Part shown: one piece after another, positions 44,390-55,286 of the stretch
Layout of the letters: each line of letters opens with the position of its first letter
Numbering within the stretch: position 1 is the first letter of the stretch
IMG/VR virus record: IMGVR_UViG_3300050821_009835
Location: 62,001 to 126,000 of that record
DNA: 64,000 bases
Reading direction: 5' to 3' (one strand)
Made by a program: the position numbers and the translations under genes
Notes under the pieces: generated by a model
Told to the model about the DNA's origin: nothing
The model's input: the letters and a program-made list of their open reading frames with translations, nothing else
Database searches by the model: none

Positions 44390-45049
44390 ATGTCCACAAT
44401 TCCTATTCCACAACCCGTGCCTTCCAGTTCCTACGATTATATTCACCAAGATATCGTAGCAACAGCTCTTATTCTTCCCACAGAGAATGACAGTTTCTAT
44501 AATCCAGTAGCAAATCTACACACAGGGTTTGCTTTTGATGGGAGGCTCTATAGAGCAGGAGTTCCTATTGCTTCAGGAAGCCCACCTACATACACTCATG
44601 CAACATGGTGGACTGAGTACACTTCTCTTCCAAACCCTTATCGGGGAGATCAAGCCAATTTCCCGGCAACCGGGTTACTCCTGCTATCACCCGTTTCCCT
44701 TACGATTCTCGATCAGAGCAACCAGGCACTCCCAATGTGGATGCAATTTCTACTATGCGATTCCTTTATGTTTGCTAATGATTTTTCCACTGGGAACTCA
44801 AATTACCCCAATCCTTTATTGAATGGATGGAACCCAAGCGGTGTAACTTACGCTGACGGAATAGTTTCTGTTATCTATACTCCTGACATTGGAGCGTATT
44901 CCGTGGATGCTGAGGCTGCGGGGTCGCCACCATCTTTAGTTGGACCATTCACGATACAACCTGGTGCCGTTGGAAGCGGCCCCAATATGGTTCTTTCCAT
45001 TGATTTTTCTCACGACTGGGCATACTTGGATGTCCCTGTTGCCAGTTAA
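44390..45049 (+). CDS. Hypothetical protein, structural-like composition
   Basis: Lone plus-strand ORF; GGAG SD; P/S/T-rich. Confidence 0.65.
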   Translation: MSTIPIPQPVPSSSYDYIHQDIVATALILPTENDSFYNPVANLHTGFAFDGRLYRAGVPIASGSPPTYTHATWWTEYTSLPNPYRGDQANFPATGLLLLSPVSLTILDQSNQALPMWMQFLLCDSFMFANDFSTGNSNYPNPLLNGWNPSGVTYADGIVSVIYTPDIGAYSVDAEAAGSPPSLVGPFTIQPGAVGSGPNMVLSIDFSHDWAYLDVPVAS

Positions 45050-45118
45050 TCCGGTAACTTTTACCGTATTCTTTTCGCTGTTTTGTTGAGATTTCTGACC
45101 TAATCGACGCGCATTTAG

Positions 45119-45143
45119 CGGCGAATAGAAACTCTATTCGCCG
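45119..45143. terminator. Perfect 11-bp hairpin between convergent genes
   Basis: CGGCGAATAGA-AAC-TCTATTCGCCG; overlaps the stop codon of 45134..45499. No clear U-tract. Confidence 0.55.
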
Positions 45144-45499
45144 TAATCATCAGTAAAACCTTCTGGGATTGGAGGCATAGGAATCGTTTGATCCTTCATT
45201 GAATGAGTACAATCTCCCTGATAAGCAATCATACCATTGGTCACAATGTAATGACAGGTGAACGGGATTGTGTGGCCAGCAGCATCACGTTCCCACTCTC
45301 CAGTCCAAACCCCATCTTTCCATTGACGTTTAAAACCAGACTGGCGAAAACTAGGAGTAAATGTGGGATTTTCTAGGTCTCCATTGAACTTCCAACTATC
45401 AGGGAGAGGATGCATTTCTCCACAGGCAGGACACCAATGAAAATAACCTTCTGAACAACAGCCTGCTGCGCGTCGAAGTTTGCTACTGACCTGCCCCAC
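45134..45499 (-). CDS. DUF6527-like Cys/His protein
   Basis: HWCPACGEMH...WKFNGDLENPTFTPSF...CHYIVTNGMI...DCTH. Confidence 0.65.
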   Translation of the reverse strand: MGQVSSKLRRAAGCCSEGYFHWCPACGEMHPLPDSWKFNGDLENPTFTPSFRQSGFKRQWKDGVWTGEWERDAAGHTIPFTCHYIVTNGMIAYQGDCTHSMKDQTIPMPPIPEGFTDDYGE

Positions 45500-45915
45500 T
45501 AGCGACCCCCGTTTCCCACAACACGTTTTACAGCCATCTTTCCATGACGAGCTAGAGCGGTGTTTAAAGCCGGGGTCTCTCCTTTATTAAATCCTCCAGC
45601 TCCATCCCCAAGAGTACGACCTGAGGATGGCTGATATATAGAAGGCCCGCGTAAGCCACTGCCACCACCTGCGGAACCAAACTCAAATTCTTCGCTTGCA
45701 CCTGAAATTTCTCCCAGCGGGCCTACTGAGCCATACTGAAATTTCGGGGTGTCGGCACGTTTGATGCGGGTAGCCCCGACGCCCCCAGATGTCTCCAGCC
45801 CAACCTCGAGAGCAGCTTCCACTTCATCTGCAGTGGCAATTTCCTCTGCTTGGATGGCAACTGTATCCGCCCAATTGATTGCTTTACGGCCTGCGAGAGA
45901 AGAATGTTTGCGCAT
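45499..45915 (-). CDS. Hypothetical Gly-rich protein
   Basis: Between the polyprotein and the DUF6527-like gene; stop overlaps the downstream GTG start. Confidence 0.65.
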   Translation of the reverse strand: MRKHSSLAGRKAINWADTVAIQAEEIATADEVEAALEVGLETSGGVGATRIKRADTPKFQYGSVGPLGEISGASEEFEFGSAGGGSGLRGPSIYQPSSGRTLGDGAGGFNKGETPALNTALARHGKMAVKRVVGNGGR

Positions 45916-45923
45916 ACTAGAGG

Positions 45924-48900
45924 TTAGAAATTAAGGAGATCAGCCTGCTTCAGTGCTTTCAGAATCGCATCAGCATTCGGCGGTAGAGTAACAATTAAAG
46001 TGCCTTCGTCGTTTCCAGTCATATAGACTTTTCCATCTTTCTCTCTAAGGCGTGGGTCAAAGATGTGATAATCGTCAGCAGCATCTATCCCTTTACCTGT
46101 GCTCGGGAAGAACACATACTTGAATGTATCTACAGTAATGAAAGCCCAAGGGGATAAAGTGTCTTTCTGCCCAGTAGAGGGAATACTAATCGTTGCAACC
46201 TGCTTGGCCAAGCTGACCGGGAGATAAACTCTACCCGACTTAGACATGAAATAGAGAAACTCCTGGTCCGGATGCTCTTTCAAATAAGTACCCACCTGCT
46301 GAGCCTCTTGTTCTGCTCCCTTGCTATACCGTTTTTGAGCTTTTTCTTTTCCCACAGCAGGTAGTATCTCCATACCCGCCTGTTCAATTTCAGACAATGG
46401 CACAACTATACCGCCCGAGCTTTGATATTGGAGAGTATAGCTACCTGCAGGAAGTGTCACTACTTGAGCAGAGTAAGTTCGGCGAGTGATGCTAGACCCT
46501 GTTTGTAGAAGAACTGGAACAGGCTGAGTAATCTTTATCTTGGTGCGAGGAAGAGCGGCGTCTGGCACCTGATTTAATCTTTTTCCAATTTCATCTGTGT
46601 ATGAGACAAACGTGCTCTTCTCTTTCGAGATAGTTGGTAGAGGGAGTCCCGCATATTGTTCAGCCGTTATCTGTTCAATGTTTGGAGACCACATTAAACC
46701 GGAACCAGCCTTGTATTTGTATGGTTTCAGATCTACCCCCAATGCAGAAGCCTGTTTTTCAAATTCAGCCATCCAAGAAGGATTAGGTAACCCATAGAGT
46801 TGTAAACCCGCTAGCATACTAGATCTACGGATTTGTTGCTCATCCACAGCTGCTTTGTAGAACGAGAATGAAGCTGTTTTTCCGACCTCCTTGAACAGTT
46901 TCGGGTCCCAGAACACTTTGTGCTGATCTTTGTATTTTCCAGTGTTCACGCATTCCGTCTTACCTGGGCCTTCCGTATGGGATACAACTGTTTCTGCAAC
47001 GGGAGTACCATCAAAAGTAAAAACGAGCTTCTCCCCTGGCAAGCAGACGATGGGATGACGGAACGCCCAGAATTCTAGATTACCTTCAGGCGGTTCTTCC
47101 CAAAAATGTTCACGAGACGCCTTGGGAACTTCGATCTTGAAAGAGCGTTTCGTCATCCGCCCTGCCTTTTTAGAAGACTCCTTCGCGAGTTCCGCAGGAT
47201 CTAGATCCAACTTAAAAATCTCCACATGATCCGGCGTGAAGACTACACCCGGGATCTTCTTCCAGCTGTAACCGCCCCCGGTTTCATAGACGTTATGCGG
47301 AATGTCCACAGCATAAACTTCTTTACCGAACTCATTGTCCATGTAGACTATGACATAAGCATGATCATCACCCGGTTGTCCGCCTTCGGTCACGCTGCAC
47401 TCAATCGGGACCCGATCATAGACGACCCCGGTTATGGCCTGAGCGATCTCGTCACAGATTCCACCTGTTCCGTTCTCAGGATCCTCACCTGCTTCATTCT
47501 GGTCCCAAGCATCATAGATCTTCTGCGCTTCCGCTGCCATCTCCAGTGTAGCTTCTTGCAAGTAGTGAAGAAGCACAGTCCGGTTACGGGTGGCGGTATG
47601 CTCAAGGCATCCTCCGGACAGGCAAGCGACGCAGACCTTCGCAGCGATCCGAGAAGATGCGGCAGTCTTATGAGACAGAAACTTCTGCCACTCCACGCCA
47701 AATTCCTGAAGTGGGAGATTATCCGGCAGCTCTGTTAGCCAAAGATACAGAGCAACCGGGTCGACGTCCTTGGGCTTGATCACGTCATAGTGGTTGTCCA
47801 TGACACGAATGAGGCCGTTCTTGAGAGAAAGTCCGACGACGTTACCGAAAGTCACGCGCTGAAGTTCTCTATCAATGTCCGCGTTTGCAGTTTTGGAAGC
47901 ACTAAATTTTACAAATGCCTTATCCTGAATCTGCCTACCGTAAGCAATATCGTCCAGTATAGCACCGTCGTAACCTTGTTTCTGGAGTACCCGAACCAAC
48001 TGACTCACTTCCGTGCCGTGAAGATTGCTATCGAAAATCGAGGCAGGCGTATTCATCTCATTGTTAATGCCCAATTTAGAAGCTTCCGCTACGATGACAT
48101 CCCAAGGTGCAGGATTACTAATGGATATTTCTCCCTCGTTTAATTGCCCGCCCGTTCCGAAACGATCATTGTACATCTCAACATAGGACTCTGCCATTTC
48201 CTTGTTAGGAGTCCAATAAGTCACGGCCCCGCCTGGTTTGCTGTTGCCTCCGTTATACATCTTTGAAGCAATTTTGGACGCCAAGGTTAAGCTGTAATCC
48301 TTCTGCCCATGCGTTGCGCTGGGTGTCTCTTCAACTGGATGAGTCTTTTTCAAATCCTCCCAAATCTTTCCAGATTCTCCAATGCGATAGTTGGCTGGAC
48401 TCTCTACTTTCTTGACACCGTGTTCTTTGAGAAAGTCAAACCCCATCCTATAGAGGTAGGAGCCATATCCCTGCCGACGAAAATCGTATTCAACCCAAAC
48501 ATTATGGACAGCTGCGACAGTCCCTGGAGAATACACAATAAATTGAATCTTGCCAATGTAGACGCCCTGGAGATTTTTAGCCTCGAATGTATGGATTATT
48601 GCCCCAGACTTGACTCCAGCCTCTTTCTCAGTATGCTCAATCTGAATTTCTGAAGGATTTGCCGGCGCGGTTGCAGTTTTTCTGGTTCCAATGTATGCTT
48701 GGATGGTTTTATCACCGCGCATCTTAGCCGCATCCCGACGATGATAGCCGTCAACGACGTATTTATTGCTGCCAATAACGATTGGGGGTAGCGCGGTCTT
48801 GCGTTGCGAGTATCCCCAAGCCACTGGAGGATGTTTACCCTGCCCCCAATGGATGCTGGGATCATTAATATCTATGGTCTGAAGAACGTACTCATCTGCT

Positions 48901-51374
48901 TCAGCTATCCATTCTGGATCTTCAAATGGTTTTCGTTCCCACCCCTTTTTATGGAGAGAGTTAACATACTCGAGCATTCCATCGGGGGTTAATAAACTTG
49001 GATATCGTTCATCGTTCTCCTTAGCTCGTTTGTTTTCTTTGCGCCCCCAAATTTCGATCGGCAGATTCCTTCCGATTATCAAAGCCGCTATAGCACGATG
49101 TTGTCCATTCAAAATAACCAAACGACCATCCTTTAACCGAGAAACAGGCACAGGCGGAGGGATGCTTCCCGCTTTCCACATATCCGCGTATTCTTGAGCT
49201 TTTTGTTTACTTCCCTCTGGGTTGTTTAATTCTTCTTGCGTATAAAGTTGACTTGGGTCCATTGAAGTCGTTTCTAGAAGTGTCAAACGACCGGCCTCAA
49301 ACTCCAACAAATCGTTGAAAGATTCATCTGTCGGCTCCATGTATTTTAAAGAATCATGACCCGAATGGAAAGCTGCTTGTTTATGACTTCCAAACGGAAC
49401 CCCATTACGCGCTCCATTGGCTCGAGAGAGCACGAGAGAGCCGCAGGAGAAGGAGATACCCTGCGCCCAATCTGACCCCTCGTACTTGTGAGCAACCTCT
49501 GGCTTCACGTAAGCGATAGTTACATGGGGTTTATAGGGAAAATCATCTTTACGATTTCCTATAGCAGAATCGACCAATTCATGGAGGACATGTAAATCTG
49601 CAGCATGAGCTTCGGCAACAATAGGAACTCCTCCGGCTTCAGATGCTGTAAAAGCATGCATTTTACCCAATACGACAGAAAAATTGTGCTGCTCACCTAC
49701 AGCCCAGGCCAGTTTTTCTAGATTCTCTTCCACACCAAACTTTACCGTAATGTGAGGATCATCTTCAATCCCCTTCACATCTAGATCCTCGGCAGGTATA
49801 CGGCGGGCTACAGCGAAGACATCGTCTCGTGCTGGACCAGATAATCCGATAATCACAAGAGGCTTCTTATCCTTGCCCAAATACTTAGCCATTCTGAGGT
49901 CGTAGCCCATCCTGCTGTTGCTGAAAGCAATTCTGACATCAGGGTATTTTTCGCGCAGACGCTCAAGAACTGGACGTATCTTAGTCTCCCCTTCAGAAGA
50001 GAAGGTGGAGATTTTCAATTCATGACGACCAGAATCTTGTACAAACTTTACAGCAGCTTCGAGTAACTGGCGAGCATACCCTCGTCCTTCATAACCTTTA
50101 CGAGTCGTGATATGCATTAACCAAAACTGATCTGGATTGTTTGGGTTAGGGTAGAGTTCACAATCTGCTACAATCTTGCCATCGTCAAGGATATCAAAAT
50201 GGGGTTCCTGACGAAGATCAGAATGACGAAGATACATTGTCTCTTCCATCAAACGGTTGTCTTCTTGCTGGAATTTGCGAATCTGTTCACCCTTCATGAA
50301 AACAGGTGGAGAGGCTGCGGTTTTAGCTGCGGTTACAGTCTTTAATTTATCGGGAGGATTTTGCCAAGCACCCCCATTTTCTTTCCACCCGATAATCGAG
50401 ACTGTAGTACCCTCTATTAAACGAATTTCTGCTTCTTCAGGGGCAGCTAGATTGCAATAAGCTGTTGCCAACCAGTCAACCTGACCTGGGACAACTGTTC
50501 CTTTAAAAACTAAAGCTGCACCCCCCATAGCATTGTAAGGCTGGGCTGCATTTTCTTCCCAAGACCAAAACTTACCGAAATTATCTGGATTTATCTGATT
50601 TATGGAAGCAGAAATAGCTCGATAAACGGGTAACCGATTTGTCCTGGCGAGCTCCTTAAGATGCTCTTCAACAGGGGCATAGGAAAGTTCTAGAAACTGC
50701 TCTGCTGCAACCTCGAGTTGCTCTTCGGGTAAGTTTTGATTGATATTATTTTCCCGAAGATACTGATGAAATTCTCCAGAAGGAATTGTATCCCAAAAAC
50801 CGCCGTAATTTAAGACTTGATCAAAGCTGGGAACACCCGAGGCTGCTTTAGATTCAATCCCAAACTCCTCGGGCATCATCAATTCAAGAGGGATAAATGA
50901 TTGAGTCCCTTTCTGCTTCTCAGGCTGATTGACATATCCGTTAGTCTCTTCTACGAAAGTTTCGTCTCGTCCGGGAGTCTGTTTGTGGGTTGCGGTCTTC
51001 CTAGATTCCCGAATAGGACTTCCCATTTCCGTTTGATAGATGTTAATCCGTTTTATCAATTCTTTAGGAATTTTCTTACCGGGGTAAACCCAAGTTACAT
51101 TATCCTCTAAAAGGACTATTCCCTCCTCCAACTTAGAAGGGTCTACAACAACGATAGCAATTTCATCAACCTCAGCATATCTGGATCCCCAATGAGCAGC
51201 ATAATCTAAATCCTCAGCGAAGTAGATCCCTCCGTTTGGGACATAAAGACCGTCGCGCTTGATTTTTTCCACATTTTCCACCGGGGTGCCATGGAAAATT
51301 TCTGGGGGGAAATACTTAGCGACGACGCCTTTTGGCGCGACACTTAGCCCCGGCTTTTGCAACAAAGGATTCAT
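45924..51374 (-). CDS. Giant polyvalent protein (about 1816 aa): ART x3, GNAT x2, 2H phosphoesterase, ParB-like x2, papain-like, unknown domains
   Basis: FHGT; YRA...FWSW...EEAE; GYEGRGYA; HITV/HVTI; NGQHR; DGYHR; FRRQGYG; YNG...YWT...GYDG; GICD...DHAY...VDI. Start uncertain (51374 or 51392) and overlaps the JAB gene end. Confidence 0.85.
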   Translation of the reverse strand: MNPLLQKPGLSVAPKGVVAKYFPPEIFHGTPVENVEKIKRDGLYVPNGGIYFAEDLDYAAHWGSRYAEVDEIAIVVVDPSKLEEGIVLLEDNVTWVYPGKKIPKELIKRINIYQTEMGSPIRESRKTATHKQTPGRDETFVEETNGYVNQPEKQKGTQSFIPLELMMPEEFGIESKAASGVPSFDQVLNYGGFWDTIPSGEFHQYLRENNINQNLPEEQLEVAAEQFLELSYAPVEEHLKELARTNRLPVYRAISASINQINPDNFGKFWSWEENAAQPYNAMGGAALVFKGTVVPGQVDWLATAYCNLAAPEEAEIRLIEGTTVSIIGWKENGGAWQNPPDKLKTVTAAKTAASPPVFMKGEQIRKFQQEDNRLMEETMYLRHSDLRQEPHFDILDDGKIVADCELYPNPNNPDQFWLMHITTRKGYEGRGYARQLLEAAVKFVQDSGRHELKISTFSSEGETKIRPVLERLREKYPDVRIAFSNSRMGYDLRMAKYLGKDKKPLVIIGLSGPARDDVFAVARRIPAEDLDVKGIEDDPHITVKFGVEENLEKLAWAVGEQHNFSVVLGKMHAFTASEAGGVPIVAEAHAADLHVLHELVDSAIGNRKDDFPYKPHVTIAYVKPEVAHKYEGSDWAQGISFSCGSLVLSRANGARNGVPFGSHKQAAFHSGHDSLKYMEPTDESFNDLLEFEAGRLTLLETTSMDPSQLYTQEELNNPEGSKQKAQEYADMWKAGSIPPPVPVSRLKDGRLVILNGQHRAIAALIIGRNLPIEIWGRKENKRAKENDERYPSLLTPDGMLEYVNSLHKKGWERKPFEDPEWIAEADEYVLQTIDINDPSIHWGQGKHPPVAWGYSQRKTALPPIVIGSNKYVVDGYHRRDAAKMRGDKTIQAYIGTRKTATAPANPSEIQIEHTEKEAGVKSGAIIHTFEAKNLQGVYIGKIQFIVYSPGTVAAVHNVWVEYDFRRQGYGSYLYRMGFDFLKEHGVKKVESPANYRIGESGKIWEDLKKTHPVEETPSATHGQKDYSLTLASKIASKMYNGGNSKPGGAVTYWTPNKEMAESYVEMYNDRFGTGGQLNEGEISISNPAPWDVIVAEASKLGINNEMNTPASIFDSNLHGTEVSQLVRVLQKQGYDGAILDDIAYGRQIQDKAFVKFSASKTANADIDRELQRVTFGNVVGLSLKNGLIRVMDNHYDVIKPKDVDPVALYLWLTELPDNLPLQEFGVEWQKFLSHKTAASSRIAAKVCVACLSGGCLEHTATRNRTVLLHYLQEATLEMAAEAQKIYDAWDQNEAGEDPENGTGGICDEIAQAITGVVYDRVPIECSVTEGGQPGDDHAYVIVYMDNEFGKEVYAVDIPHNVYETGGGYSWKKIPGVVFTPDHVEIFKLDLDPAELAKESSKKAGRMTKRSFKIEVPKASREHFWEEPPEGNLEFWAFRHPIVCLPGEKLVFTFDGTPVAETVVSHTEGPGKTECVNTGKYKDQHKVFWDPKLFKEVGKTASFSFYKAAVDEQQIRRSSMLAGLQLYGLPNPSWMAEFEKQASALGVDLKPYKYKAGSGLMWSPNIEQITAEQYAGLPLPTISKEKSTFVSYTDEIGKRLNQVPDAALPRTKIKITQPVPVLLQTGSSITRRTYSAQVVTLPAGSYTLQYQSSGGIVVPLSEIEQAGMEILPAVGKEKAQKRYSKGAEQEAQQVGTYLKEHPDQEFLYFMSKSGRVYLPVSLAKQVATISIPSTGQKDTLSPWAFITVDTFKYVFFPSTGKGIDAADDYHIFDPRLREKDGKVYMTGNDEGTLIVTLPPNADAILKALKQADLLNF

Positions 51375-51861
51375 AGTTCTTCTTTCGTTCAACTGCTAAT
51401 GGACGAAGGCACGGCCAATAGCTCACAACCGTCTTCCGCCTACTACCATCTTTTGGAATTTGAATAGCACAAACAGCCAAAATCGATTCTTGCGTGTTCA
51501 AACTGTCCCGGATATCGTGTTCGCTTAAAACCGCGTCGTCGCAATCGGGGTGAGTATGAATCGTCCCCAAGAACTCGAGTTTGATTCTTCGACCAGATAC
51601 AGAGTCATAGATCTCCGTGTCCTTGGCATCATCCTCATGCCGATCTAGTTCTAGGTCTTCATCAATGCAGACTACTTTACGAGTGTTGGTTTCCTTTTTA
51701 TTGATGTCGCATTTAATGAAGGCACAAATGTACACTGTGTCTCCACGGACATAACCCCATAAAGCCGAAATGGTTTCTTTGGGGGCATAACGCAACGCTC
51801 GCCGACGAAAGCGCCCTTCTTCCCTGCCGTCAACAACGACTTTCAAGAAAGGTGCGATCAT
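51316..51861 (-). CDS. JAB/MPN+ metalloprotease
   Basis: Catalytic E (KETIS) and HxHx7Sx2D motif (IHTHPDCDDAVLSEHD); SD AAGGA. Confidence 0.85.
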   Translation of the reverse strand: MIAPFLKVVVDGREEGRFRRRALRYAPKETISALWGYVRGDTVYICAFIKCDINKKETNTRKVVCIDEDLELDRHEDDAKDTEIYDSVSGRRIKLEFLGTIHTHPDCDDAVLSEHDIRDSLNTQESILAVCAIQIPKDGSRRKTVVSYWPCLRPLAVERKKNYESFVAKAGAKCRAKRRRR

Positions 51862-51870
51862 CTTAGTTCC

Positions 51871-53448
51871 TTAGTTTAAAATACTATTCACCATGGTCGT
51901 TACTCGACCTTCTGTTTCGCCCCGGCGCTCACATAACTTCTGCAAGCGAGTTTTCTTTGCTTTCTTGACTTTAATCTCAAAATCCTCGCTCGCTGTAAGA
52001 TGATACCGCGCTGCAGCAAGCCTACGTTTTAAATGAGCCACTACCCCTGTTTGTAACGGGCAGCCCGTGCGACGCTCAATCTCTCCTTGCAGTTCGTCAA
52101 TGCTTGATTCGCCCGCACCAACCAATGCTCCCAGCATTTCCAGAATCTGAACTTCAGCCTCAGACAACTGGCCCATGCTCGGCTTATAGCCCAAGTCATG
52201 GTTCACCTCTTGCAAAGCATGCATCAGAATGGAAGCAGCCTGAATTTCTACAACCGTGCCCTCATACCAAACAGTATAGTGGAGTGCTCGATAAATCTGA
52301 CCGTCTTCTGGATCAGCATCGCGTGGAAATTCCTTTACGGGTCTGGCCTGTTCAAAATTTGATTCAATGATCGCTCGAACCTTTTCTTGATCATGAGGGA
52401 AATACAATGCTACACGTACCCCAGCCAGGTCCTTAATGTCTTGCTGAATTGCTGCCAAATCCTCATACTGATTTTTGTTGTTACGATTCATTAGCTTATC
52501 ACGCAAACTTCTCGTACGTTTGGCACGGCTGGTGACCAGCGCCTTAATCTTGTCTGCTTGGAATATATCCTCAAGAAACTCTTGCACCTCCAAAGCCACG
52601 TGTTCGTAAAACTCGAAATCGTAACTATCGAGGAACCGCATAATGAGCTTGGGAACACTGGCAGAAGTCTTCAAAACAGTTCCTATGGAATCTGATCCTC
52701 CATCATGCTTTAACGCTTGTCTTATTCGAGAATCAAAATTAATCGGGTATTCGGTGAGTTCGTATAATTTCTGTACCATAGCGGTTAAAACTCCCGCATG
52801 TTGTAGATCTTTTGCTACTTCATATCGACCCAATCGCGTTCTTCCAGAAATAATTGTATAGGGTAACTGTCCGGCTGTTCTCCCTTCCAACAGTGCAGTC
52901 AATACTCCCGAGGTCTTGTATTCTTCTTCTGAAATGATGTAATTCGAAAAATGCAATTTACTGATAAGTTCAGGATTATAGACACCCTTCAGATGCTGAT
53001 CTGCACCCGTCTTATTCACCTGATTTTGATTCTCTGCGACAGCGTCAAAGAGATACTTGAGAGGAATCTCGTCAATGTCCCCAAGATTCTTGTCTCCCCA
53101 CATATCGGTGTAGCATTTCTCTGCGCTCAAGAGATCCGGGAAGCCAAGGAACACTTTGTATTCGTCAAATTCACCTTTATCGTCAAGTTGTTCAACAGCA
53201 TAGGCATATTCAGCCGATTCATCTTCTCCGACATACACATCCACTGGTTCTTGATCCCCGGATCCAGAAGTGGCGGGAATATATCCATAATCTGCCAACA
53301 TTTCTTTCTCCCAATGAGTTCCATCGGGTAAATCTCCCTCTCGAATTCCTCCCTTTGGGGTTTCGATGATTATCGGCAGCCCCTGGTAAGAAGACGGTCG
53401 ATTAACGTCTCCGCTTGCTCTCTTAAGGAATGTAGCAGTCAAACTCAT
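51871..53448 (-). CDS. Polyvalent protein: pyrophosphatase-like domain + RelA/SpoT nucleotidyltransferase (small alarmone synthetase-like)
   Basis: IETPKG...DYGYI...D.EPVDVYV (PPase fold); RAKRTRSLRDKL, DLAGVRV, YRALHY, VEIQ, EVNHDLGYK (RelA/SpoT). Confidence 0.85.
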   Translation of the reverse strand: MSLTATFLKRASGDVNRPSSYQGLPIIIETPKGGIREGDLPDGTHWEKEMLADYGYIPATSGSGDQEPVDVYVGEDESAEYAYAVEQLDDKGEFDEYKVFLGFPDLLSAEKCYTDMWGDKNLGDIDEIPLKYLFDAVAENQNQVNKTGADQHLKGVYNPELISKLHFSNYIISEEEYKTSGVLTALLEGRTAGQLPYTIISGRTRLGRYEVAKDLQHAGVLTAMVQKLYELTEYPINFDSRIRQALKHDGGSDSIGTVLKTSASVPKLIMRFLDSYDFEFYEHVALEVQEFLEDIFQADKIKALVTSRAKRTRSLRDKLMNRNNKNQYEDLAAIQQDIKDLAGVRVALYFPHDQEKVRAIIESNFEQARPVKEFPRDADPEDGQIYRALHYTVWYEGTVVEIQAASILMHALQEVNHDLGYKPSMGQLSEAEVQILEMLGALVGAGESSIDELQGEIERRTGCPLQTGVVAHLKRRLAAARYHLTASEDFEIKVKKAKKTRLQKLCERRGETEGRVTTMVNSILN

Positions 53449-53633: not shown

Positions 53634-55286
53634 ATGAAATGCGGAGGGAACGCTATTTTGAGCAAAAAAGGTACGTTATCCCCAGAAATTCTTCAACCCA
53701 TTCTTGACGCCTATAACGCAAACGGCGGGAACATATCAGCAACGGCCAGAATGTGTGGTGTCAGTCGTAAAAAAGTTTATACAGCCCTCCGTCAAACGGG
53801 TGGTATCAAACGAAGTGGGCATCGTCCGACATTAGCTGCAGGAACTGTCTCTGGCGTCACTCTCGTTGTTAATCCCCTCCCGTCCAAAGACCAGATTAAG
53901 CGATACATCCTTACATCAGCCCAGAATAACACTTATGTCCATGATGATGTTTGGAAAAATATCCTTGCACTTGCAGAATACTACAACGCCGAATTGTACG
54001 TAGGCAGTTTTTCCTACGACAAAAATGCATATGGGCCTCTGGCTGTAAAAGCAGATACCTACGATGCGGGCGATCAAAAAGAACTATGGTTTGATCCGAA
54101 AATCGAAAAGCATCGCAAGGATAAACGCATTGAACTAGGCAATGGATTATGGTGGTGCGGCGAGATGAATGTTCTTCCAACTGCTAATGACCCGCTGGAA
54201 GGCTTGGAAGTCTACTCCGGGCGCAAGTCAGCAATCTTCCCCCATGCTAAAATGGCGATGCGTTCCATTGCTACAATGAAGGGTGAAGGCACCAAATTCA
54301 ATTACACCACGGGAACCGTCACCAAGAAAAATTATATTCAGAAGAAAGCCGGGCTCAAAGCCGAATTCCACCATGTTTACGGCGCTTTACTAGTCGAGGT
54401 TAACAGCAACGGCAATTGGTGGGTGCGACAATTGGAGGCCGATGGGAACGCTCGCATCCAAGATTTAGCTGTACTCGCGAATAATGGCCAGGTCACCGAG
54501 GGACATCGTATTGAAGCAATAACTTGGGGGGATATCCATGCTACGATCATTGAACCTTCAGTGATGAAACAAAGCATGGATATGCTCCGCATTCTAAGAC
54601 CAAAATACCAGTTCCTTCATGACATCATGGAAGGTGCCTCAGTTAATCACCATAATGAGAAAGATCCCTTTGAACGGCACAAAGCATACATTCGTGGGTT
54701 GGATAACATAACAACTGAAGTAACACGCACTCGAGCAGTTCTTGAAGAGTATGTTAAGAACGGCGGCCCCGATATTCAGACTCTCGTCGTCGATTCTAAT
54801 CACGATAATTGGTTCTATCGCTGGTTAAAGTCCAATGATCCCCGTAAGGGAAATCCCTGTAATGCTATCCTTTACCACGCAGGCAGTTTAGCTGCGCTGT
54901 ATGCCATTGAAAAAGAAGATAAAAAATTCAACATGACAGAATGGCTGTTTCGACGTTTCGGCGTGCCAAAACAAATCCGCTTTCTTGCTACAGATGAATC
55001 CTTCACTATCTGCAACAAGAAGATTGAGTGTGGTATGCACGGGCACCTTGGGCCTAATGGCGCAAGAGGAACTCCTCAAAATCTGTCTAAAGTGGGTCGG
55101 AAATCTATAACTGCACACACCCACAGTGCAGGTATATACGATGGAAATTATGTAGCCGGAACTAGCACTCAACTCGACATGGGCTATAATCATGGCCCTT
55201 CTAACTGGTCACACTCAGACGTACTGACTTACCCATCTGGCAAACGCTGCATTGTTACGAAATACGCTGGTAATTGGAGAGCGTAA
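53634..55286 (+). CDS. HTH + calcineurin-like metallophosphoesterase, T5 A1-like nuclease candidate
   Basis: HTH GGNISATARMCGVSRKKVY; ILTSAQNN; WGDIH, HD, SNHD, MHGH, AHTHS. The A1 likeness is from recollection. Confidence 0.65.
   Translation: MKCGGNAILSKKGTLSPEILQPILDAYNANGGNISATARMCGVSRKKVYTALRQTGGIKRSGHRPTLAAGTVSGVTLVVNPLPSKDQIKRYILTSAQNNTYVHDDVWKNILALAEYYNAELYVGSFSYDKNAYGPLAVKADTYDAGDQKELWFDPKIEKHRKDKRIELGNGLWWCGEMNVLPTANDPLEGLEVYSGRKSAIFPHAKMAMRSIATMKGEGTKFNYTTGTVTKKNYIQKKAGLKAEFHHVYGALLVEVNSNGNWWVRQLEADGNARIQDLAVLANNGQVTEGHRIEAITWGDIHATIIEPSVMKQSMDMLRILRPKYQFLHDIMEGASVNHHNEKDPFERHKAYIRGLDNITTEVTRTRAVLEEYVKNGGPDIQTLVVDSNHDNWFYRWLKSNDPRKGNPCNAILYHAGSLAALYAIEKEDKKFNMTEWLFRRFGVPKQIRFLATDESFTICNKKIECGMHGHLGPNGARGTPQNLSKVGRKSITAHTHSAGIYDGNYVAGTSTQLDMGYNHGPSNWSHSDVLTYPSGKRCIVTKYAGNWRA

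What the first reader, a model, noticed from the sequence alone, without database searches (positions are those of the whole stretch)
45134..51861. Polyprotein is bracketed by a JAB protease and a DUF6527-like protein
Seen: a complete JAB motif gene overlaps the polyprotein start, and a DUF6527-like gene (PTFTPS...CHY) lies two genes downstream. No E1, E2 or ubiquitin-like gene is visible in the window. Known: JAB enzymes deconjugate in type II CBASS (Cap3) and Bil systems. My recollection, which needs checking, is that DUF6527-like proteins occur in bacterial ubiquitination-like operons, possibly as Ser-His peptidases. Inference: a phage anti-ubiquitination pair that strips host Ubl or CD-NTase conjugates from virion proteins, or proteases that mature the polyprotein.
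Basis: partly seen in the sequence, partly recalled or inferred. Interest (0 to 1): 0.62.

Follow-up and report, generated by a model that had tools for sequence, protein, structure and literature searches.

The report
Two unpaired peptidases flank phage polyprotein
A giant soil phage has two small, apparently active protease genes on either side of a huge multi-enzyme protein it probably delivers into the host, but the two proteases occur separately in other phages, so they are not a matched anti-ubiquitin pair.

Summary
Window 51316-51861 (-) encodes a 181-aa JAB/JAMM metallopeptidase with a complete motif (E29, H102, H104, S113, D116). It overlaps the start of an 1822-aa multi-domain polyvalent protein. 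Window 45134-45499 (-) encodes a 121-aa DUF6527 protein, one gene further on. The phage protein keeps the dyad (S50, H83). No E1, E2 or Ubl was found in the 265-kb virus record.

The pair idea does not hold. The closer JAB relatives always sit beside an InPase gene, and in the six contexts with enough downstream sequence beside a giant effector or NUDIX gene. One is the cultured jumbo phage Tunturi_5, which has no DUF6527 at all. DUF6527 is a roaming single gene in 281 sequenced phages and at prophage edges, without this JAB or a polyvalent protein nearby.

My best reading has two parts:
- The JAB is the trans-acting peptidase of the polyvalent-effector cassette.
- DUF6527 is an independent orphan BubE-like (iso)peptidase, plausibly a counter-defence against host Ubl conjugation.

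Both substrates are inferred, not shown.

The parts
51871..53448 (-). 525-aa protein with an N-terminal polyvalent-type InPase domain (residues 20-131) and a RelA/SpoT nucleotidyltransferase domain (307-423). It is the first gene of the cassette.
   Evidence: Pfam InPase 101.4 bits and RelA_SpoT 52 bits. PHROG matches fall inside large virion and DarB-like proteins. An InPase gene is adjacent to the JAB gene in all 8 closer contexts.
51316..51861 (-). 181-aa stand-alone JAB/JAMM (MPN+) zinc metallopeptidase with a basic C-terminal tail. Its last 59-77 nt overlap the polyprotein ORF in the +1 frame.
   Evidence: PF14464 27.4 bits against a cut-off of 25. ESM Atlas model matches Prok-JAB and CSN5 clusters at TM 0.69-0.72. 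178 representative relatives at E <= 1e-3, the 150 listed all 91-203 aa.
51514..51558 (-). JAMM metal-binding motif H102-x-H104-x8-S113-x2-D116. The general-base Glu E29 lies at 51775-51777.
   Evidence: Codons checked. E29, H102, H104 and D116 are invariant and S113 is at least 90% conserved in 80 sequences. Kept in 144-149 of 150 representatives.
45924..51392 (-). 1822-aa polyvalent protein. TTG at 51392, with a likelier ATG start at 51374. Domains: a weakly ART/Tpt1-like N-terminus, GNAT (378-462), 2H/LigT phosphoesterase (517-656, weakly Acb1-like), ParB-like (691-782), a second GNAT stretch, and several unassigned domains. No HExxH zincin is present.
   Evidence: Pfam, PHROG and NCBIfam matches. 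No HExxH. Homologous giant proteins follow the JAB in L005, L006, L007 and Tunturi_5.
46872..50999 (-). Span holding the recurrent K-T-A linker motif. KTA lies at residues 132, 357, 865, 905, 1167, 1242 and 1505. Variants are KQA 671, KIA 1040 and KKA 1408. Most fall between the recognised domains; KTA 865 lies beside what looks like a second ParB-like motif.
   Evidence: 7 KTA against 0.53 expected. They are 7 of only 35 in about 323 ORFs of the genome. The motif is also enriched in homologues: 4 against 0.55, 3 against 0.41, 4 against 0.22.
45499..45915 (-). 138-aa Gly-rich, low-complexity protein with no family match. Its TAG stop overlaps the GTG start of the DUF6527 gene by one base.
   Evidence: No Pfam, PHROG, PADLOC or NCBIfam match. 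Weakly conserved counterparts sit directly upstream of DUF6527 in L007 and L005. Junction read.
45134..45499 (-). 121-aa phage-clade DUF6527 (BubE-like) protein. Putative Ser50-His83 dyad at 45350-45352 and 45251-45253. Putative zinc ligands C23, C26, C82 and C97 or H99.
   Evidence: PF20137 30.2 bits and phrog_3362 E 5.6e-20. Ser and His are invariant across 25 Bub-type and phage-type sequences and in 34 close homologues. AF2 model pLDDT 88.7, all-beta. The only fold match is the DUF6527 cluster, TM 0.69/0.76. Codons checked.
44390..45049 (+). 219-aa ORF on the opposite strand, convergent with DUF6527. It probably marks the end of the cassette's transcription unit. This is context, not part of the system.
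   Evidence: ORF list. No family match. A terminator-like hairpin at 45052-45066 lies directly after it, though such sites occur at chance frequency in the region.

Best explanation
The 8.3-kb minus-strand unit from 53448 to 45134 is a polyvalent-protein cassette of a soil jumbo myovirus. The record is 265 kb, and the same JAB protein stands on a 340-kb contig. Polyvalent proteins are giant multi-enzyme proteins that, on Iyer et al. 2017's account, phages deliver into the host with their DNA. The cassette carries two small stand-alone peptidase genes with intact active sites, but they are not a pair.

(1) The JAB is a JAMM zinc metallopeptidase of a family found, where contexts could be read, in phage-like DNA. 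Its closer relatives always sit next to an InPase gene, and where enough sequence follows, next to a giant multi-domain effector or NUDIX gene. I infer that it is the cassette's trans-acting peptidase. It would process or activate the InPase-RelA/SpoT protein and the 1822-aa polyvalent protein. Those proteins lack the embedded zincin domain that is proposed to do this job in other polyvalent proteins. They carry a recurrent K-T-A motif between domains.

(2) The DUF6527 protein belongs to a divergent phage clade of BubE, with the Ser50-His83 dyad and a zinc knuckle. It moves as a single accessory gene through hundreds of unrelated phages and prophage ends. I infer an orphan (iso)peptidase, most plausibly used to undo host ubiquitin-like conjugation of the Bub or Bil type, or to cut some other target.

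Shown: the genes, motifs, fold, gene neighbourhoods and independent distributions. Inferred: both substrates, virion delivery, and cleavage at the K-T-A linkers.
For: JAB active site and family:
- The motif is complete and conserved family-wide.
- The fold is classic JAB/CSN5-like, TM about 0.70.
- There is no RadC match at E <= 0.1.

JAB neighbourhood:
- An InPase gene is adjacent in all 8 contexts whose JAB scores E <= 1e-37 against the family profile, or is a close relative by the word search. These are the window, L005, L007, the ERZ1759910 contig, L042/43, L044/45, L054 and Tunturi_5 gp271-273.
- None was found in the 4 readable contexts at E >= 1e-33.
- The neighbouring giant proteins carry the phage-type polyvalent domain set: GNAT, 2H, ParB, ART-PolyVal, NUDIX, RelA/SpoT and InPase. 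This matches Iyer et al. 2017, PMC5512222.
- Those giant proteins have no HExxH.
- KTA is enriched 7 against 0.53 expected, and also in homologues.
- The cassette lies next to baseplate and tail genes.

DUF6527:
- BubE is a Ser-His peptidase that removes BubA conjugates.
- Genuine type II Bub operons were recovered: BubBD lies upstream in 8 loci. So were type I operons, with BubCD in L057 and L058.
- The Ser of the PS motif and the His before the aromatic residue are invariant across both clades.
- The confident all-beta model matches only the DUF6527 cluster.

Independence of the two genes:
- DUF6527 is in 281 phage records, in unrelated contexts.
- It sits at prophage edges next to a lysin or an integrase.
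- The JAB is in 1 phage record.
- Tunturi_5 has no PF20137 match at E <= 1.
- No E1, E2 or Ubl was found in the record.
Against: Against the JAB as a processing peptidase:
- Characterised JAMM enzymes cut after the C-terminal Gly-Gly of a beta-grasp domain. The K-T-A linkers look nothing like that, and no Gly-Gly lies at a linker.
- The JAB persists next to a small single-domain InPase (174-203 aa) and a 227-aa NUDIX gene in L044/45, where there is no polyprotein to cut.
- Virion packaging of these proteins is inferred from the literature and gene position only.

Against DUF6527 as a BubE-like deconjugase:
- The phage clade is far from BubE. It has CPxC in place of CxCxC, a 15-35-residue insert between Ser and His, and an extra C-terminal D-C-T-H...G-Q-x-V-x-L-P motif.
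- It lacks the hydrophobic extension of BubE.
- Its own profile does not retrieve BubE at E <= 10.
- BubE activity in vitro is very weak.
- DUF6527 of any type was seen in only 17 of 401 sampled Pseudomonadota genomes, so Bub is a rare target for such a common phage gene.

General: no prohead protease was identified, so a conventional protease for the linkers cannot be excluded.
Confidence: 0.5

Rival explanations
1. JAB and DUF6527 act together as a phage anti-ubiquitination pair. They would strip host Ubl or CD-NTase conjugates from virion proteins, mirroring the two peptidases (BubC JAB and BubE) of type I Bub operons.
For: - Both peptidase families of type I Bub operons are present, and both have intact catalytic residues.
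- No E1, E2 or Ubl is encoded, so any Ubl substrate would be the host's.
- The two genes stay within a few kb of each other in three related contigs: the window, L007 and L005.
Against: - The distributions are independent: 281 phage records against 1. Tunturi_5 has the JAB cassette and no DUF6527. L042 and L044 show none nearby.
- In L005 the DUF6527 gene is on the opposite strand, in another operon.
- The phage JAB profile scores only 12-16 bits on BubCD.
- PADLOC JAB models give only E 0.009-0.045.
- The co-location therefore looks like synteny by descent within one clade.
Confidence: 0.1
2. Both proteases mature the polyprotein, cutting at the K-x-A linkers to release the individual enzymes.
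For: - The K-T-A motif is strongly enriched, lies mostly between domains, and is conserved in homologues.
- The polyprotein has no embedded zincin.
- Iyer et al. 2017 argue that polyvalent proteins need a processing peptidase.
- Both genes lie in the same strand block.
Against: - DUF6527 is common in phages whose read contexts show no polyvalent protein nearby: RcapMu, 9NA, Kuttervirus, Paella, and prophage edges. It is absent from Tunturi_5, which has one.
- The known specificities of both families are for a Ubl C-terminal Gly, not K-T-A.
- An unidentified prohead or host protease could cut the linkers, or the motif may not be a cleavage site at all.
Confidence: 0.12
3. The JAB is not a protein peptidase here. 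It works with InPase and NUDIX on a nucleotide-derived substrate, for example removing an amino-acid or peptide moiety from a nucleotide signal, as part of a signal-destroying counter-defence module.
For: - The most persistent neighbours are InPase and NUDIX, even as small single-domain genes coupled by 4-nt overlaps (L044/45, L054).
- Iyer et al. note that the JAB fold is shared with enzymes that act on nucleotides. They also note that polyvalent-type InPase associates with NUDIX and GNAT, and probably acts on nucleotide-like substrates.
- The cassette also holds RelA/SpoT and a 2H phosphoesterase weakly like Acb1.
Against: - The family has the classic JAMM peptidase motif, including the Ser.
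- Its fold matches CSN5-like JABs rather than RadC.
- No JAMM enzyme with a non-peptide substrate is established.
Confidence: 0.13
4. Phage DUF6527 has a role unrelated to Ubl. It could be a head-assembly accessory or a peptidase that cuts a specific host or phage protein.
For: - It lies between terminase and portal in RcapMu, and directly after portal in 9NA.
- The phage clade has its own conserved features: an insert and a C-terminal D-C-T-H...L-P motif.
- Bub operons are rare.
Against: - Elsewhere it sits among early or accessory genes or at prophage ends. It has no constant neighbour. That pattern is typical of accessory or anti-defence genes rather than assembly genes.
- The BubE dyad is strictly kept.
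Confidence: 0.15

Closest known systems
BubE (DUF6527/PF20137), the Ser-His peptidase of bacterial Bub ubiquitination-like operons (bioRxiv 10.1101/2024.11.21.623953)
   Same: - Pfam match above the cut-off.
- Invariant Ser (PS motif) and His (before an aromatic residue), aligned with BubE S92 and H102.
- A Cys-rich zinc knuckle.
- A compact all-beta fold with no PDB homologue.
   Different: - No E1, E2 or Ubl partner.
- CPxC...C-H instead of CxCxC...C-x-x-H.
- A 15-35-residue insert between Ser and His.
- An extra conserved C-terminal motif, and no hydrophobic extension.
- It is phage-borne and stands alone. The phage-clade profile does not retrieve BubE.
JAB/JAMM deconjugating peptidases of bacterial conjugation systems: Cap3 (type II CBASS), BilC and the BubC domain of BubCD
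   Same: The same Prok-JAB family and a complete E...HxH...S..D motif. It is a small soluble enzyme.
   Different: - It is not next to any E1, E2, Ubl or CD-NTase.
- PADLOC JAB models match only at E 0.009-0.045.
- The family profile scores 12-16 bits on BubCD.
- Its constant neighbours are InPase and polyvalent or NUDIX genes.
Phage-type polyvalent proteins with an embedded zincin (MPTase) domain, such as P1 DdrB and N4 vRNAP-like proteins (Iyer, Burroughs, Anand, de Souza and Aravind 2017, PMC5512222)
   Same: - A giant multi-effector protein with GNAT, 2H, ParB, ART-like, RelA/SpoT and InPase domains.
- It lies beside virion genes.
- The need for a processing peptidase is the same.
   Different: - No HExxH domain lies inside the protein.
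- A separate classic JAB gene sits beside it instead.
[quoted passage not shown]
Lambda tail assembly protein K (JAB fused to NlpC/P60) and RadC
   Same: Both are JAB-fold proteins that occur in phages and mobile elements.
   Different: There is no NlpC/P60 domain, no PHROG match and no position inside a tail-assembly module. There is no RadC Pfam match at E <= 0.1.
Deubiquitinases and deISGylases of eukaryotic viruses (from general knowledge, not tested here)
   Same: The concept is the same: a virus carries a conjugate-removing peptidase without the conjugation machinery.
   Different: The folds and hosts differ. For the phage enzymes no substrate is known.

Membership tests
JAB/JAMM (MPN+) metallopeptidases, Pfam PF14464 | Profile match above the curated cut-off | tested here: met
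   27.4 bits against 25. The Tunturi_5 homologue scores 38.2 bits.
JAB/JAMM (MPN+) metallopeptidases, Pfam PF14464 | Catalytic motif: Glu, then H-x-H-x(n)-S-x-x-D | tested here: met
   E29, H102, H104, S113 and D116 are present. They are kept in 144-149 of 150 representatives.
JAB/JAMM (MPN+) metallopeptidases, Pfam PF14464 | JAB (deaminase-like) fold | tested here: met
   The ESM Atlas model matches Prok-JAB and CSN5 clusters at TM 0.69-0.72. My own AF2 model was too poor to use, pLDDT 43.7.
JAB/JAMM (MPN+) metallopeptidases, Pfam PF14464 | Peptidase or isopeptidase activity | not testable with these tools
   Needs an enzyme assay.
Cap3 / BilC / BubC deconjugases of defence systems | Match to the defence-system JAB models | tested here: not met
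   PADLOC JAB models give E 0.009-0.045, 12-14 bits. The family profile scores 12-16 bits on two BubCD proteins.
Cap3 / BilC / BubC deconjugases of defence systems | Operon with E1, E2 and a Ubl or CD-NTase | tested here: not met
   No ThiF, DUF6791 or Multi_ubiq in the 265-kb record. The neighbours are InPase and polyvalent genes.
RadC clade of JAB | RadC profile match | tested here: not met
   No RadC family is listed at E <= 0.1.
Lambda K-type tail assembly protein | JAB fused to NlpC/P60 inside the tail-assembly module | tested here: not met
   The 181-aa protein holds a JAB domain only, and no PHROG matches.
DUF6527 / BubE | Profile match above the curated cut-off | tested here: met
   PF20137 30.2 bits against 23.6. 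The match covers profile positions 3-51 of 63. Relatives match positions 3-62 across the insert.
DUF6527 / BubE | Ser-His catalytic dyad (Citrobacter BubE S92 and H102) | tested here: met
   Window S50 and H83 fall in the two columns that are invariant across 14 Bub-type and 11 phage-type sequences. Ten of the Bub-type loci were checked to have BubBD or BubCD upstream.
DUF6527 / BubE | C4 zinc site (CxCxC plus a Cys before the His) | tested here: inconclusive
   The phage clade has C23-x2-C26, C82 and C97 or H99. C97 is Ser in some members, while H21, H30 and H99 are invariant. No coordinates were available to check the geometry.
DUF6527 / BubE | Compact beta-sandwich fold without known structural homologues | tested here: met
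   AF2 pLDDT 88.7, all-beta. No PDB match at E <= 0.001. The only Atlas match is the DUF6527 cluster, TM 0.69/0.76.
DUF6527 / BubE | Encoded in an operon with the Bub E1, E2 and Ubl | tested here: not met
   None in the record. The phage-type loci lack BubBD.
DUF6527 / BubE | Hydrophobic N- or C-terminal extension | tested here: not met
   The protein begins directly with the first strand, which aligns with the BubE segment I-S-L-K-F-R. It ends in a short acidic tail.
Phage-type polyvalent proteins (Iyer et al. 2017) | Several unrelated effector domains in one polypeptide of a phage, drawn from the typical set | tested here: met
   GNAT (two stretches), 2H, ParB-like and a weak ART/Tpt1-like domain. 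The neighbouring gene has InPase and RelA/SpoT.
Phage-type polyvalent proteins (Iyer et al. 2017) | Embedded zincin (MPTase) processing domain | tested here: not met
   No HExxH in the 1822-aa protein or in most homologues.
Phage-type polyvalent proteins (Iyer et al. 2017) | Packaged in the virion and delivered to the host | not testable with these tools
   Only the position beside baseplate and tail genes is known. No proteomics exists for Tunturi_5.

The most novel reading that the evidence does not exclude
Phage-clade DUF6527 proteins (phrog_3362) occur in at least 281 sequenced phages, including Salmonella Kuttervirus and 9NA, and in many prophages. They may be a widespread family of viral de-conjugases that strip host Bub- or Bil-type ubiquitin-like modifiers from phage proteins. 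That would make them the bacterial counterpart of viral deISGylases. Separately, a classic JAB may have replaced the zincin domain as the processing enzyme of polyvalent effector cassettes in soil jumbo phages.
Probability: 0.25. Interest if true: 0.8.

Novelty: new variant of a known kind. Interest (0 to 1): 0.5.

Why it matters
Bacterial ubiquitin-like conjugation (Bil, Bub, type II CBASS) is a newly recognised arm of anti-phage immunity. In the paper library searched here I found no report of a phage-encoded enzyme that reverses it.

A strictly conserved BubE-type Ser-His dyad, in a small gene scattered through hundreds of phages that lack any conjugation machinery, is a concrete and testable candidate for such a counter-defence.

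The conserved InPase-JAB-polyvalent triad, together with the K-T-A linker motif, gives a handle on an open question from Iyer et al. 2017: how giant polyvalent effector proteins are cut into working parts. A cultured model phage, Tunturi_5, is available for this.

The finding also corrects the tempting idea that the two flanking peptidases form one system.

Tried and rejected
Searches and models that gave nothing usable:
- Megablast of the locus against phage records gave no match.
- A pattern scan of viral contigs with the JAB found nothing.
- AF2 of the JAB with 11 sequences gave pLDDT 43.7, which is unusable.
- PDB sequence searches with both proteins gave only chance hits.
- Foldseek of the DUF6527 model against the PDB found nothing at E <= 0.001.
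- hhalign of the phage DUF6527 alignment against one BubE aligned only the N-terminal half, E 0.19. The dyad equivalence rests on the 25-sequence MAFFT alignment and the Pfam model.
- The promoter and terminator scan gave counts at chance level.
- Prohead protease families S77 and S78 gave no match in the record.
- Relatives cannot be drawn for a virus record.
- Complex prediction of the InPase domain with the JAB returned no verdict. This is neither support nor evidence against.

Ideas considered and dropped:
- The 138-aa protein as a Ubl precursor, because it ends in G-G-R. It is low-complexity, and the ending is not conserved in L007 or L005.
- A programmed frameshift fusing the JAB to the polyprotein. 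The downstream frame is +1, so a simple -1 slip cannot reach it. I saw no shift-prone site by eye. The overlap varies from 35 to 89 nt in the close relatives. It falls to 0-4 nt in the more distant relatives L042 and L044.
- The conserved M-G-Q-V-S-S N-terminus of DUF6527 as a lipidation-like signal. It is the first strand of the fold and aligns with BubE.
- Apparent long DUF6527 fusion proteins in high-GC genomes. These are open-frame artefacts upstream of the true start.

No alternative genetic code was used.

Full report
WHAT IS THERE

The window is part of a 264,912-bp single-contig IMG/VR virus record, estimated 78% complete. The identical JAB protein also occurs on a 340-kb contig. A baseplate wedge gene and giant fibre-like ORFs lie just downstream, so this is a jumbo myovirus-like phage.

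Five genes run head to tail on the minus strand:
- 51871-53448: InPase + RelA/SpoT protein, 525 aa.
- 51316-51861: JAB, 181 aa.
- 45924-51392: multi-domain protein, 1822 aa.
- 45499-45915: Gly-rich protein, 138 aa.
- 45134-45499: DUF6527, 121 aa.

A convergent plus-strand ORF (44390-45049) follows, so this block is probably its own transcription unit.

THE JAB

- Pfam Prok-JAB matches just above its cut-off, 27.4 against 25 bits.
- The JAMM residues are all present: E29, H102-x-H104, S113, D116.
- A whole-library profile search found 178 representatives at E <= 1e-3. The 150 listed are all stand-alone proteins of 91-203 aa.
- Among 150 of them the five catalytic positions are kept in 144-149.
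- The ESM Atlas model matches Prok-JAB and CSN5 clusters at TM about 0.70.
- RadC does not match. No PHROG matches. PADLOC's defence-system JAB models match only at E 0.009-0.045.

The gene ends 59-77 nt inside the polyprotein ORF, which is in the +1 frame. The overlap recurs in close relatives at 35-89 nt. It disappears in more distant ones. I read it as overlapping genes, not as a frameshift site.

DUF6527

The Bub preprint (10.1101/2024.11.21.623953) shows three things about DUF6527, which it names BubE:
- It is a Ser-His dyad peptidase with a C4 zinc site.
- It cleaves BubA-GFP.
- It removes BubA-target conjugates.

To compare the window protein with real BubE, I recovered Bub operons from bacterial genomes:
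- A Bradyrhizobium locus has Multi_ubiq, DUF6791-ThiF (BubBD) and DUF6527.
- Seven further loci have BubBD directly upstream of DUF6527.
- Two loci have a Prok-JAB-ThiF fusion (BubCD) upstream, which marks type I Bub.

In a MAFFT alignment of 14 Bub-type and 11 phage-type sequences, two columns are invariant. One is the Ser of the P-S motif (window S50). The other is the His before an aromatic residue (window H83).

The phage clade differs from BubE in four ways:
- It has CPxC instead of CxCxC.
- It has a 15-35-residue insert between Ser and His.
- It has an added conserved C-terminal motif.
- It has no hydrophobic extension.

The AF2 model is confident (pLDDT 88.7) and all-beta. It has no PDB neighbour, and its only Atlas neighbour is the DUF6527 cluster.

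The GTG start at 45499 is right. The N-terminus it adds is almost invariant among homologues, whereas the 93-aa gene call on record would drop the CPxC knuckle.

NO CONJUGATION MACHINERY

ThiF, DUF6791 and Multi_ubiq give nothing at E <= 1 in the whole record.

ARE THE TWO A PAIR? NO

The JAB's constant companions are an InPase gene and, where the contig runs on, a giant effector or NUDIX gene. An InPase gene is adjacent in all 8 closer contexts:
- the window;
- L005, L007 and an ENA contig;
- L042/43, with InPase, JAB, a 1252-aa protein and an 840-aa NUDIX protein;
- L044/45, with a small InPase, JAB and a small NUDIX, coupled by 4-nt overlaps;
- L054;
- the cultured Acidobacteriota jumbo phage Tunturi_5. 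There gp271 is the JAB and gp272 is InPase-GP88. gp273 is a 1489-aa protein with NUDIX, ART-PolyVal and GNAT domains.

More distant JAB relatives lack the InPase neighbour.

The complete Tunturi_5 genome has no DUF6527.

Conversely, tblastn finds DUF6527 in 281 of 50,697 phage records, while the JAB is found in one. The DUF6527 contexts are unrelated to one another:
- between terminase and portal in RcapMu;
- directly after portal in 9NA;
- between topoisomerase and DexA in a Kuttervirus;
- among small accessory genes in Parshik, KLER1-1 and Arthrobacter phage Paella;
- at prophage ends, next to a lysin or an integrase.

Within the window's own clade DUF6527 stays near the cassette in the window, L007 and L005. 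In L005 it is on the opposite strand, in another operon. The bracketing is therefore real, but it is best explained as synteny by descent.

THE POLYPROTEIN

It fits the phage-type polyvalent proteins of Iyer et al. 2017, PMC5512222. It has GNAT, 2H phosphoesterase (weakly Acb1-like), ParB-like and a weak ART/Tpt1-like N-terminus. InPase and RelA/SpoT are in the neighbouring gene.

That paper proposes an embedded zincin domain as the enzyme that cuts such proteins into working units. It knows JAB only as RadC domains in conjugative elements. Here there is no HExxH.

The motif K-T-A occurs 7 times against 0.53 expected. These are 7 of only 35 occurrences in about 323 ORFs of the genome, and most fall at domain boundaries. 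Homologues show the same enrichment.

HOW IT MOST LIKELY WORKS

Shown:
- Two catalytically intact orphan peptidase genes are present.
- An InPase-JAB-polyvalent triad is conserved.
- A phage clade of BubE is independently mobile.

Inferred:
- The JAB processes or activates the cassette's proteins in trans.
- DUF6527 is an (iso)peptidase that acts on a host Ubl conjugate or some other target.

Weak points:
- Known JAMM and BubE enzymes cut after a Ubl C-terminal Gly, not at K-T-A.
- The JAB persists beside single-domain InPase and NUDIX genes. That keeps alive a rival reading in which it acts with them on a nucleotide-derived substrate.
- No prohead protease was identified.
- A co-folding test of the JAB with the InPase domain gave no verdict.

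NOVELTY

Both families and the polyvalent concept are known. The following I did not find in the library:
- the classic-JAB variant of the polyvalent cassette;
- the K-T-A linkers;
- the recognition that a large phage family (phrog_3362, function unknown) is a BubE clade with the dyad intact.

The claim is moderate, and both halves can be tested in culturable phages.

Noticed in passing
window 46872-50999 (-), residues 132-1505 of the polyprotein: K-T-A, with K-Q/I/K-A variants, recurs between domains. It occurs 7 times against 0.53 expected, and these are 7 of 35 in the whole genome. The polyvalent proteins of L007, L005 and L042 show the same enrichment. It may be a protease site or a linker signature.
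   Followed up: partly
window 51316-51392; L005 3466-3554; L006 702-736; L007 7315-7373: The polyprotein ORF always starts inside the 3' end of the JAB gene in the +1 frame, with a 35-89 nt overlap. The JAB's overlapping tail is a conserved, very basic peptide. More distant relatives (L042, L044) have a 0-4 nt overlap instead.
   Followed up: partly
window 49425-49841 (-), polyprotein residues 517-656: The 2H/LigT phosphoesterase domain gives a weak sub-threshold match to the anti-CBASS protein Acb1 (PF23474, E 0.004, 17.3 bits against a cut-off of 27). This hints at cyclic-nucleotide degradation.
   Followed up: no
window 51871-53448 (-): InPase is fused to RelA/SpoT. The RelA/SpoT part also matches the PADLOC candidate defence protein PDC-S33 (E 4.3e-7). 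Two K-T-x-A-like stretches (residues 146 and 260) lie between its domains.
   Followed up: no
window 45134-45499 (-): The public gene call for this protein (P0013, 93 aa) starts at Met29 and drops the CPxC zinc knuckle. The GTG start at 45499 is supported by a nearly invariant N-terminus in homologues.
   Followed up: yes
window 53634-55286 (+): A 550-aa protein divergent from the cassette matches phrog_1745, 'DNA transfer protein', very strongly (558.8 bits).
   Followed up: no
window 44390-45049 (+): A 219-aa ORF with no family match is wedged between the cassette and the tail-fibre-like 1303-aa gene, on the opposite strand. A hairpin plus T-run follows at 45052-45066. It overlaps the TTG start proposed for the 1303-aa ORF by 10 nt.
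   Followed up: no
L023 11357-12724 (Bradyrhizobium G001:C205): A type II Bub operon has a group II intron reverse transcriptase/maturase gene lying between the Ubl gene (bubA) and the E2-E1 fusion gene (bubBD).
   Followed up: no
L042 2154-3461: In one relative the InPase protein carries an N-terminal extension with an HExxH motif at residue 118. A zincin and a JAB may therefore coexist in some cassettes.
   Followed up: no
L050 14001-14486 (Tunturi_5 gp271): The JAB homologue of the cultured phage is annotated 'minor tail protein' and the InPase-GP88 protein 'minor head protein'. Both labels look like transfers from PHROG categories rather than evidence.
   Followed up: partly
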